From: Obrimoposthia wandeli
Lineage: Eukaryota
DNA length: 64,000 nucleotides
Direction of reading: 5' to 3'
Assembly: GCA_977020255.1 (NCBI GenBank)
Contig: CDROCS010000253.1
Coordinates: forward strand, 868,001-932,000
The notes under the pieces are model-generated. The model was not told the DNA's origin. It searched no databases and saw only the letters and a list, made by a program, of their open reading frames with translations. This document shows, piece by piece, positions 30,746 through 31,324 of this stretch; the stretch's first letter is position 1, and every line of letters starts with the position of its first letter. Both the position numbers and the translations under genes were made by a program.

Positions 30746-31324
30746 TTAAGCAATGGCCTTTTTTTTCTCAACAAATTGTGTGATCGTTTCTTTTAAAAGC
30801 GCAAAATTTAGTGGTTTGCCAAAACAAGTTTCAGCCCCTAATTCAACTATCCTATTTACATTATCATCCGTTAATGCGCCGGTCATTGCAATAACACTAA
30901 TATTTGCTGTTGCAGGCGTACTTTTAATACGGTGGCAAATAGAAAAGCCATTAATGCCAGCCATCATTAAATCTAGCATGACCAAATCAGGCTTAAAAGT
31001 ATGCAGTAGATCGCCTGCATCAAAAGGATTATAAGCTATTTTCATTTTAGCGTGAGGAAAAAGGTTTTCTAGGAACTGAGTAAGCATATCGGCAAATTCT
31101 TTATCATCTTCAATGATTAAAATAGAGAAGCTGTTTTTTACACTTGCTTGAGGTTGAGACATTAAGGATAAGATGTCGTTTTTATCGAAACGCCTATGAC
31201 CACCTGGTGTCATAATAAAAGGTAGTCGACCAATTTGAGCCCAATGGCGAATAGTCGTTGGCGCTACATGCAATAATTTAGCCGCTTCTGCAGGTGTTAA
31301 CAGAGACTTTTTACTTATATCCAA
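30746..31324 (-). CDS. Response regulator with N-terminal BldC/excisionase-like HTH and C-terminal REC domain
   Basis: [39 protein letters not shown] followed by IIEDD, DLVMLD, AMTG and GKP. Confidence 0.9.
   Translation of the reverse strand: [192 protein letters not shown]

What the first reader, a model, noticed from the sequence alone, without database searches (positions are those of the whole stretch)
30746..31324. BldC-like DNA-binding domain fused to a phosphorylatable receiver in a gammaproteobacterium
[39 protein letters not shown] closely parallels Streptomyces BldC (LLTPAEVATMFRVDPKTVTRWAKAGKLTSIRTLGGHRRY, recalled). BldC/Xis-type domains polymerise head-to-tail on direct repeats (established). 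The REC keeps the acidic pair, phospho-Asp, Thr and Lys, and is C-terminal, the reverse of the usual order. Inference: phosphorylation gates cooperative filament formation on DNA. I know of no characterised example, though the domain architecture may be catalogued.
Basis: partly seen in the sequence, partly recalled or inferred. Interest (0 to 1): 0.76.

Follow-up and report, generated by a model that had tools for sequence, protein, structure and literature searches.

The report
BldC-type response regulator with 9-bp operator
This Colwellia gene encodes a two-component response regulator whose DNA-binding head resembles Streptomyces BldC; it belongs to a large, catalogued but almost unstudied family, whose genes are typically preceded by arrays of short repeats spaced exactly 9 bp apart, as BldC-style chain binding predicts.

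Summary
Window 30746-31324 (-) encodes a 192-aa protein with an N-terminal MerR-like winged helix (HTH_17) and a C-terminal receiver that keeps all catalytic residues. BldC is the closest solved relative of the winged helix by sequence and by fold.

It is not uncatalogued. The receiver of the Colwellia psychrerythraea orthologue is PDB 3CNB (2008, "DNA-binding response regulator, merR family"). Thousands of HTH_17+REC proteins exist in public data. Papers describe one MerR-type response regulator, Shewanella HnoC: an unphosphorylated tetramer that represses and is released by phosphorylation. I could not obtain its sequence, so its kinship is untested.

New here: a unique array of three direct 9-bp repeats lies in the divergent promoter region and is conserved in orthologues. 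CpG-centred arrays of 3-7 units at exactly 9 bp, BldC's footprint per protomer, recur upstream of distant family members. This was first seen in genome loci, then replicated on 40 independent metagenome loci (Fisher p about 1e-9 against other spacings). That supports multi-protomer binding.

Phosphorylation control is inferred from the intact receiver and the conserved adjacent PAS histidine kinase; its direction is unresolved.

Verdict: new member of a known kind, with a testable family-wide operator prediction.

The parts
30746..31324 (-). Response regulator gene (192 aa plus stop): BldC-like wHTH, linker, receiver
31157..31303 (-). N-terminal MerR-like winged helix (residues 8-56, HTH_17/BldC-like) with the invariant W28 and T39-x-G-G-H-R-R motif
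   Evidence: Pfam; BldC is the best PDB sequence hit and best fold hit; column counts
31127..31156 (-). Flexible inter-domain linker (residues 57-66); there is no MerR-type coiled coil
   Evidence: AF2 pLDDT is below 50 for residues 57-63. Linker length varies from 9 to 32 residues in the family
30782..31123 (-). C-terminal receiver domain (residues 68-181); phospho-acceptor D118, acidic E72/D73/D74, T148, K170
   Evidence: Pfam; 87% identical to PDB 3CNB; conservation
31449..31475 (-). Array of three direct 9-bp repeats (CGACAAAAA CGATAAAAA CGACAATGC in the regulator's sense): the predicted operator
   Evidence: Unique in the window, expected 0.03 by chance. It is the most conserved intergenic block in 8 orthologous loci. 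A family-wide 9-bp register is shown
31470..31500 (+). Putative sigma-70 promoter of the divergent PAS-MCP gene: TTGTCG (inside repeat unit 1), 19-bp spacer, TATAAT
   Evidence: Read from the sequence. This is a consensus match only; no transcript data exist
31383..31398 (-). Second conserved intergenic block (ATTGATCTAGGTTAAT), function unknown
   Evidence: Invariant columns in alignment A3; coordinates
28487..30328 (-). Probable cognate histidine kinase (3 PAS domains, HisKA, HATPase_c), downstream on the same strand
   Evidence: Pfam. The adjacency is conserved in Colwellia and Thalassotalea, and PAS kinases also follow distant homologues
28129..28485 (-). Single-domain receiver (118 aa) directly after the kinase
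   Evidence: Pfam; conserved synteny
31550..33085 (+). Divergently transcribed PAS-MCP (Aer-like chemoreceptor), candidate target
   Evidence: Pfam; conserved divergent arrangement
33091..35697 (+). PAS-GGDEF-EAL protein immediately downstream of the MCP, candidate co-target
   Evidence: Pfam; synteny
30430..30744 (.). MITE-like insertion (about 316 bp, terminal inverted repeats) between the regulator's stop codon and the kinase
   Evidence: Three copies in the window at 89-90% identity. Relatives have only about 40-100 bp between the two genes

Best explanation
The gene encodes a phosphorylatable two-component response regulator of the large HTH_17(BldC-like)-REC family. Shown: the domain organisation, the intact receiver active site, the BldC-like fold without a MerR coiled coil, the conserved neighbouring PAS histidine kinase, and the conserved 3 x 9-bp direct-repeat array in the divergent promoter region. 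Inferred: one winged helix binds each 9-bp unit, so several protomers line up side by side as in BldC (9 bp per protomer). They sit on the array that overlaps the -35 of the predicted promoter of the Aer-like MCP / GGDEF-EAL genes, about 125-150 bp upstream of the regulator's own start. Also inferred: phosphorylation of D118 by the adjacent PAS kinase changes how the receivers associate, and through the flexible linker changes cooperative occupancy of the array. This would couple a cytoplasmic PAS signal (redox, O2 or light type) to chemotaxis and c-di-GMP genes and probably to autoregulation. The direction is unresolved. I lean slightly towards phosphorylation promoting assembly, as for PhoB/OmpR-type regulators on direct repeats. 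The HnoC-type opposite is nearly as likely.
For: Domains and catalytic residues. BldC is the nearest solved relative by sequence and by fold (rmsd 1.0-1.2 A, 42-48% identity). AF2 gives two confident domains, a disordered linker and no coiled coil. The head-tail core positions stay non-polar (L18, W28, P40), not charged or polar as in classical MerR proteins (criteria from PMC5859096). The array is unique in 64 kb and is the most conserved intergenic block in 8 orthologous loci. The 9-bp register matches BldC's 9-bp site per protomer (PMC5859096). Runs of at least 4 CpG at exactly 9 bp occur upstream of 5 of 24 genome loci, against 0-1 at other spacings. On 40 independent metagenome loci, at least 3 units occur in 22/40 against 1-8 at other spacings, and at least 4 units in 12/40 against 0-2; Fisher p about 1e-9. 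The only gene these loci share is the regulator. PAS kinases are adjacent in the window and in distant loci.
Against: There are no binding, phosphotransfer or expression data, and no RNA runs exist for this organism. BldC's base-reading Arg30 is His27 here and variable in the family, and Leu43 is Pro40, so the contacts cannot be copied from BldC. NCBIfam's HTH_BldC score is below its cut-off. The family consensus unit CGATWNAAT is quasi-palindromic about the CpG. Protomer orientation is therefore not fixed by sequence outside the Colwellia clade. HnoC, the one characterised MerR-type response regulator, is reported as a tetramer on an inverted repeat that phosphorylation releases (PMC9814549, PMC9938897). 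About half of the family loci show no array within 250 bp. The MITE between regulator and kinase may uncouple their transcription.
Confidence: 0.5

Rival explanations
1. HnoC-type logic. The unphosphorylated protein is a pre-formed oligomer (for example a tetramer) that sits on the array and represses the overlapping promoter(s). Phosphorylation by the PAS kinase dissociates the oligomer and derepresses the genes, giving a feedback loop around a c-di-GMP and chemotaxis network.
For: HnoC is described as a MerR-type response regulator with exactly this behaviour (PMC9938897; PMC12471899; PMC8738867; PMC9814549). Arrays often have 4 units. In several distant loci the arrays lie 37-75 bp before the start codon, where they would overlap the core promoter. 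Family members sit next to REC-HD-GYP genes, as hnoC sits with hnoD (the hno gene order is my recall), and next to GGDEF-EAL genes. The array overlaps the -35 of the predicted MCP promoter.
Against: HnoC's sequence could not be obtained, so its membership of this family is untested. The window array has 3 clearly direct units, not an inverted repeat. Most DNA-binding response regulators bind better when phosphorylated (general knowledge).
Confidence: 0.38
2. An ordinary regulator. The protein acts as a simple dimer on a short palindrome elsewhere. The 9-bp arrays are bound by another factor, or are a structural A-tract or UP-like promoter feature unrelated to this protein.
For: The unit is AT-rich with phased A-tracts, which can act as intrinsic bends or UP elements. 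The family consensus has palindromic character. Half of the loci lack an array.
Against: The exact 9-bp CpG phasing is specific to that spacing. It recurs next to family members in unrelated genomic contexts and at GC contents from 0.24 to 0.66. A-tract bending elements are phased at about 10.5 bp, not 9 bp (general knowledge). The protein lacks the MerR dimerisation helix.
Confidence: 0.08
3. A receiver that senses something other than phosphorylation, for example redox through the conserved cysteines (C130, and C167 at the usual aromatic switch position), with the kinase playing a minor role.
For: The K-3 switch position is Cys in 60/79 members and C130 is kept in more than 90%. The surrounding proteins are PAS-rich, redox-type sensors. 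RitR-type redox-sensing receiver proteins exist (PMC5965902, title seen).
Against: All phospho-chemistry residues are conserved, unlike in pseudo-receivers, and a kinase is conserved next door. The distance between the two cysteines was not measured.
Confidence: 0.04

Closest known systems
BldC of Streptomyces (PDB 6AMA/6AMK; Schumacher et al. 2018, PMC5859096)
   Same: MerR-like winged helix without a coiled coil. It is the best sequence match (E about 1e-10, 42-48% identity) and the best fold match. The TxGGHRR motif and the Trp of the head-tail core are kept. The predicted operator has BldC's 9-bp-per-protomer register and a variable number of units (3-7).
   Different: BldC is a 68-residue stand-alone protein with no sensor domain. 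Here the domain is fused to a receiver. Arg30 is not conserved and Leu43 is Pro. The repeat unit is CpG-centred (CGATWNAAT) rather than AATTxxxxC. The score is below NCBIfam's BldC cut-off.
HnoC of Shewanella oneidensis (Plate and Marletta 2013, PNAS; known here only through citing papers)
   Same: A MerR-type DNA-binding response regulator in a gammaproteobacterium of the same order. Phosphorylation controls its oligomeric state on DNA. It is embedded in a network of PAS or haem sensors and c-di-GMP enzymes.
   Different: It is reported as a tetramer on an inverted repeat that is released by phosphorylation. Its sequence and its Pfam architecture could not be checked here, so homology is an inference.
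PDB 3CNB, receiver domain of the 'DNA-binding response regulator, merR family' from Colwellia psychrerythraea (structural genomics, 2008)
   Same: This is the orthologue: 87% identity over residues 61-191, and the AF2 model superposes at 0.7-1.0 A.
   Different: Only the receiver was solved. No DNA-binding domain, no function and no associated paper were found.
OmpR/PhoB-family response regulators
   Same: Winged-helix output domains bind tandem direct repeats head to tail, often replacing or overlapping the -35, under control of receiver phosphorylation.
   Different: The domain order is reversed, the winged-helix fold is unrelated (MerR/Xis type), and the repeat period is 9 bp rather than about 10-11 bp (the OmpR/PhoB period is from general knowledge).
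CarH/LitR-type and 8JBS-type B12-binding MerR-like proteins
   Same: An N-terminal MerR-like winged helix is fused to a C-terminal sensor module. 8JBS shares the TPGGHRRF motif. From my recall, CarH tetramers bind tandem direct repeats.
   Different: The sensor is a cobalamin-binding domain, not a receiver.

Membership tests
Two-component response regulators (phosphorylatable receiver) | Response_reg domain above Pfam's gathering score | tested here: met
   67.8 bits against a cut-off of 30.2; 87% identical to the solved receiver 3CNB
Two-component response regulators (phosphorylatable receiver) | Acidic pocket, phospho-acceptor Asp, Thr/Ser and Lys all present | tested here: met
   E72/D73/D74, D118, T148, K170; kept in 78-79 of 79 relatives
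Two-component response regulators (phosphorylatable receiver) | Partner histidine kinase and actual phosphotransfer | not testable with these tools
   A PAS-HisKA-HATPase_c kinase is adjacent and syntenic, but phosphotransfer needs an assay
BldC family (NF033787; PMC5859096) | MerR-like winged helix whose nearest relative is BldC, with no coiled-coil dimerisation helix | tested here: met
   Sequence match and fold match; helix 3 is followed by a disordered linker
BldC family (NF033787; PMC5859096) | Passes NCBIfam's curated HTH_BldC cut-off | tested here: not met
   61.7 bits against a cut-off of 77
BldC family (NF033787; PMC5859096) | Protein consists of the winged helix alone (about 68 aa, no effector domain) | tested here: not met
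   192 aa with a C-terminal receiver
BldC family (NF033787; PMC5859096) | Hydrophobic head-tail core (Phe21, Trp31, Leu43) rather than the charged or polar residue of classical MerR proteins | tested here: inconclusive
   The equivalents are L18 (Leu in 60/79), W28 (79/79) and P40 (Pro in 66/79, otherwise L/A/V/G). They are non-polar but not identical (criteria)
BldC family (NF033787; PMC5859096) | Arg30 reading the G of the C-G pair | tested here: not met
   The equivalent is H27, variable in the family; the neighbouring R26 is Arg in 55/79
BldC family (NF033787; PMC5859096) | Cooperative head-to-tail binding to 9-bp direct repeats of variable number | tested here: inconclusive
   Indirect support only: a 3 x 9-bp direct array here, and 9-bp-phased arrays of 3-7 units upstream of relatives. 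No binding assay was possible
Classical MerR family | MerR HTH domain | tested here: met
   PF00376 at 41 bits and PF13411 at 30.4 bits
Classical MerR family | Coiled-coil dimerisation helix plus C-terminal effector-binding region | tested here: not met
   Absent in the model and in the Pfam scan
Classical MerR family | Palindromic operator inside a 19-20-bp -35/-10 spacer | tested here: not met
   The putative MCP promoter has a 19-bp spacer, but the repeats are direct and lie over and upstream of the -35, not in the spacer
HnoC-type MerR-like response regulators | Sequence homology and the same domain order as S. oneidensis HnoC | not testable with these tools
   The primary paper is not held. 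The sequence was not retrievable, and no hit carried the name
HnoC-type MerR-like response regulators | Unphosphorylated tetramer on an inverted repeat, released by phosphorylation | not testable with these tools
   Needs biochemistry. The window array is direct, not inverted
Excisionase / Xis-type recombination directionality factors | Excisionase-type HTH (TIGR01764) working with a neighbouring integrase | tested here: not met
   The domain model passes (42.1 bits against 28.8), but the five flanking genes scanned against Pfam are signalling proteins, with no integrase among them

The most novel reading that the evidence does not exclude
The whole HTH_17-REC family (thousands of proteins in many phyla) works as phosphorylation-switched BldC-like filaments. 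Receivers set how many winged helices line up on arrays of 3-7 CpG-centred 9-bp units (CGATWNAAT), giving a graded, array-length-encoded transcriptional response. HnoC's 'tetramer on an inverted repeat' would then be one instance of the same quasi-palindromic array.
Probability: 0.35. Interest if true: 0.7.

Novelty: new member of a known kind. Interest (0 to 1): 0.5.

Why it matters
Response regulators are usually sorted into a few output classes (OmpR, NarL, NtrC, LytTR). This one belongs to a very common but almost unstudied class whose output domain is the BldC/Xis-type winged helix. That fold binds DNA as open-ended head-to-tail chains rather than as closed dimers. If the receiver controls chain assembly, the number of 9-bp units in an operator would set stoichiometry and cooperativity. 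That would be a different way of wiring a two-component system. The family-wide operator signature found here (CGATWNAAT at exactly 9 bp, 3-7 copies) gives a concrete sequence to test. It also offers a way to predict regulons for thousands of unannotated regulators, many of them next to PAS kinases, chemoreceptors and c-di-GMP enzymes.

Tried and rejected
- **HnoC primary papers and sequence.** I tried to read them by PMC id and PubMed id, and they are not held. Three word-index protein searches returned no protein named HnoC, and cluster look-ups gave no names. Kinship to HnoC therefore stays untested.
- **Response-regulator census papers (Galperin).** Not held under the PMC ids I recalled, so 'MerR-type output domain in the census' remains my recollection only.
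- **DigR of Myxococcus.** Checked as a possible precedent and rejected: it has a C-terminal Xre-type HTH and a palindromic site.
- **Literature searches.** 'MerR-type response regulator' and 'BldC-like' found no paper on a BldC-receiver fusion.
- The large HMMER search of representatives was not used, because nothing rests on absence of relatives. No RNA runs exist for this stretch, so read laying was not used and no transcription start could be placed.
- **Repeat finding.** The repeat finder did not report the 9-bp array; it was found by alignment and by my own scripts.
- **Other checks.** The first attempt at search for related loci failed because the alignment was too divergent. The MITE has no match in the plasmid collection. 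Classical MerR and excisionase readings were rejected on domain content and context.

Full report
**1. The observation**

An ORF at 30746..31324 on the minus strand encodes 192 residues. It starts at TTG, 9 nt after an AAGGA. The TTG and the N-terminus ([11 protein letters not shown]) are shared with homologues. Pfam finds HTH_17 (residues 8-56, E 1.5e-11), MerR (E 1.7e-10) and Response_reg (residues 68-181, E 1.2e-18), all above their gathering scores.

NCBIfam's top hit is HTH_BldC (61.7 bits), but its cut-off is 77. The excisionase-type domain model TIGR01764 passes. Against PDB sequences, the N-terminal 59 residues hit BldC best (6AMK/6AMA, E 1.4e-10 and 4.2e-10). Next comes a cobalamin-binding protein, 8JBS, that shares the TPGGHRRF motif.

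The receiver carries E72/D73/D74, D118, T148 and K170. In a 79-member family alignment these are kept in 78-79 sequences.

**2. Structure**

AlphaFold2 with a 79-sequence alignment gives two confident domains (mean pLDDT 89.6) joined by a disordered linker at residues 57-63. The N-terminal domain is strand-helix-helix-hairpin-helix, and no long coiled coil follows it.

A separate model of residues 1-61 was searched against the PDB. The first seven hits are BldC chains from the BldC-DNA complexes (TM 0.73-0.85, rmsd 1.0-1.2 A, 42-48% identity). After them come NmlR, RacA, other MerR proteins, a mycobacteriophage Xis and CarH. The receiver model superposes on 3CNB at 0.7-1.0 A.

**3. It is catalogued**

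The receiver half is 87% identical to PDB 3CNB, titled 'signal receiver domain of DNA binding response regulator protein (merR) from Colwellia psychrerythraea', released in 2008. So the orthologue's receiver was solved by structural genomics.

The word-index search found 92 clusters at E <= 1e-5. All but the few truncated or marginal ones carry HTH_17 plus Response_reg. A profile search found 4,895 clusters at E <= 1e-6, capped at 8,000 candidates. A 45%-identical relative used as query found 1,929 at E <= 1e-8. In both of these larger searches the 120 best hits listed all had the same two domains.

Sources call these proteins 'response regulator' or 'excisionase family DNA binding protein'. 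Full-length genomic relatives occur in the following groups:
- Colwellia, Thalassotalea and Paraglaciecola;
- Methylococcaceae and Burkholderiales;
- Phycisphaerae, Treponema and Lachnospiraceae.

**4. Literature**

The BldC paper (PMC5859096) supplied the criteria used here:
- BldC is a monomer that binds head to tail, cooperatively, to direct repeats of variable number.
- Each protomer covers 9 bp, with consensus AATTxxxx(C).
- The head-tail core is Phe21/Trp31/Leu43, and Leu43 is charged or polar in classical MerR proteins.
- Arg30 reads the C-G pair.
- The paper mentions small BldC-like proteins in about 500 species, but no receiver fusions.

Searches for BldC-like fusions found nothing. 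One MerR-type response regulator is characterised: HnoC of Shewanella oneidensis. Citing papers describe it as follows (PMC9814549; PMC12471899; PMC8738867):
- It is an unphosphorylated tetramer bound tightly to an inverted repeat overlapping promoters.
- Phosphorylation dissociates the tetramer and derepresses the hno genes.

PMC9938897 groups it with BldC and McdR as atypical MerR-type repressors. The primary paper and the HnoC sequence could not be obtained. Whether HnoC belongs to this HTH_17-REC family is therefore an inference. I put it at about 0.6, helped by the context described in section 5.

**5. Gene context**

On the same strand, the regulator is followed by a cytoplasmic kinase with three PAS domains and then a 118-aa single-domain receiver. 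Divergently transcribed are an Aer-like PAS-MCP and a PAS-GGDEF-EAL protein. This layout is conserved in Colwellia and Thalassotalea.

Distant family members are also followed by PAS-rich (hybrid) kinases. Some sit next to REC-HD-GYP proteins (L017; L083) or a PAS-MCP (L085). The link to PAS sensing, c-di-GMP turnover and chemotaxis therefore recurs. From my recall, hnoC sits with the REC-HD-GYP gene hnoD, which this resembles.

In this genome only, a MITE-like element of about 316 bp with terminal inverted repeats (30430-30744) sits directly after the regulator's stop codon. It stretches the gap to the kinase to 417 bp, against about 40-100 bp in relatives. Two more copies lie in the window.

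**6. The operator**

I aligned the divergent intergenic region from 8 orthologous loci. The most conserved block is a 9-bp-period direct repeat. In the window it is CGACAAAAA CGATAAAAA CGACAATGC in the regulator's sense, at 31449-31475.

- It is the best 3-unit tandem of any period from 8 to 12 bp in seven of the eight orthologous upstream regions aligned and in the Colwellia sp. 12G3 paralogue L001; in L002 a 10-bp tandem scores higher.
- At most 1.3% of dinucleotide shuffles reach it in those nine regions, L002 included.
- It is unique in the 64-kb window, with 0.03 expected by chance.
- The units are clearly asymmetric, so in this clade they are direct repeats.
- Unit 1 contains TTGTCG (31470-31475). 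With a 19-bp spacer and TATAAT (31495-31500) this forms a plausible promoter for the MCP gene, so the array would span about -58 to -32.
- The array lies 125-151 bp upstream of the regulator's start.

**7. Family-wide test**

Distant homologues (41-45% identical) showed similar arrays upstream of their own genes. L013 has 4 units and L017 has 7. I then counted the longest run of CpG at one exact spacing in the 300 bp upstream of 24 loci, for spacings of 6-14 bp. Runs of at least 4 occurred in 5 loci at 9 bp, and in 0-1 loci at every other spacing.

Because this hypothesis came from those data, I repeated the test on an independent sample of 40 non-redundant metagenome loci from a separate scan.

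| Run length | Loci at 9-bp spacing | Loci at other spacings |
|---|---|---|
| At least 3 units | 22/40 | 1-8 |
| At least 4 units | 12/40 | 0-2 |
| At least 5 units | 2/40 | 0 |

Fisher p is about 1e-9 for the 3-unit and the 4-unit tests. The GC content of these regions ranges from 0.24 to 0.70.

The consensus unit from 85 units in 22 arrays is CGATWNAAT, and arrays have 3-7 units. The regulator is the only gene these loci have in common. The arrays are therefore most simply its own binding sites, probably autoregulatory.

A constant 9-bp register across up to 7 units equals BldC's footprint per protomer. It is not what a closed two-fold dimer predicts.

One caveat applies. The consensus is quasi-palindromic about the CpG (AAT-CG-ATT; 35-63% of flank positions are palindromic). 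Outside the Colwellia clade, protomer orientation cannot be read from the sequence. HnoC's 'inverted repeat' could be the same kind of site.

**8. BldC residues**

From the HMMER alignment and the family columns:

| BldC residue | Equivalent here | Family conservation |
|---|---|---|
| Phe21 | L18 | Leu 60/79, Cys 17/79 |
| Trp31 | W28 | invariant |
| Leu43 | P40 | Pro 66/79, otherwise L/A/V/G; never charged |
| Arg30 | H27 | variable |
| Lys36 | R33 | Arg or Lys 52/79 |
| T42-x-G-G-H-R-R | T39, G41-R45 | invariant, bar one sequence at G41 |

The neighbouring R26 is Arg in 55/79. The domain is BldC-like in fold and in the non-polar character of the interface, but the base contacts must differ. 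That fits the different repeat sequence.

**9. Mechanism**

Shown:
- the architecture and the intact phospho-acceptor site;
- the flexible linker;
- the neighbouring kinase;
- the conserved 9-bp arrays.

Inferred:
- one winged helix binds per unit, with lateral cooperativity;
- receiver phosphorylation changes receiver-receiver association, and so array occupancy.

The direction cannot be decided in silico. Most DNA-binding regulators, including PhoB/OmpR types on direct repeats, bind better when phosphorylated. The only MerR-type precedent, HnoC, does the opposite. I give 0.5 to the general model with a slight lean towards phosphorylation-promoted assembly, and 0.38 to the HnoC-type sign. The rest goes to an unrelated role for the repeats or a redox role for the conserved cysteines. 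Those are C130, and C167 at the usual aromatic switch position, which is Cys in 60/79.

**10. Verdict**

The claim that there is no known example does not hold. The orthologue's receiver is in the PDB, the architecture is very common, and a MerR-type response regulator with phosphorylation-controlled oligomerisation has been characterised.

This is a new member of a known kind. The useful product of this analysis is the family-wide operator prediction.

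Noticed in passing
window 30430-30744, 38364-38680, 60457-60772: Three copies (89-90% identical) of an element of about 316 bp with terminal inverted repeats of about 23 bp (TATACCCGTTCCACTTGAAGATG...). It looks like a MITE. One copy is inserted 1-2 bp after the regulator's stop codon and separates it from its kinase. Relatives lack it.
   Followed up: partly
window 30746-31324 (-), residues C130 and C167: Two cysteines are conserved in the receiver: C130 in more than 90% of family members, and C167 at the K-3 position that is usually the aromatic switch residue (Cys in 60/79). 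A possible redox input; their distance in the model was not measured.
   Followed up: no
window 31383-31398 (-): A second conserved intergenic block, ATTGATCTAGGTTAAT, lies between the 9-bp array and the regulator's start. It is nearly invariant across 8 loci. A conserved TGCTATAGT (extended -10-like) follows at 31357-31365. Function unknown.
   Followed up: no
L017:6555-7655, L083:2744-3847, L085:1542-3905: Distant HTH_17-REC genes sit next to REC-HD-GYP proteins (L017, L083) or a PAS-MCP (L085). The link of this regulator family to c-di-GMP and chemotaxis proteins therefore recurs.
   Followed up: partly
L001 and L003 (Colwellia sp. 12G3): This genome has two paralogous copies of the regulator (83-84% identical to the window protein). 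L003 keeps the kinase and the small receiver. In L001 only residues 8-68 of the kinase match downstream, so the kinase is truncated or replaced. L001 still has the 9-bp array.
   Followed up: no
PDB 8JBS; Pfam architectures cited in PMC8717448: The same TPGGHRRF winged helix is fused N-terminally to cobalamin-binding modules, and HTH_17 appears in photoglobin/B12 architectures. The BldC-like head therefore seems to be a reusable output module for several sensor domains, not only receivers.
   Followed up: no
window 28129-28485 (-): The 118-aa receiver after the kinase has DD, D53 and K105 and looks phosphorylatable. It could be a phosphate sink or competitor for the kinase. The Pfam match covers only about two thirds of the model.
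   Followed up: no
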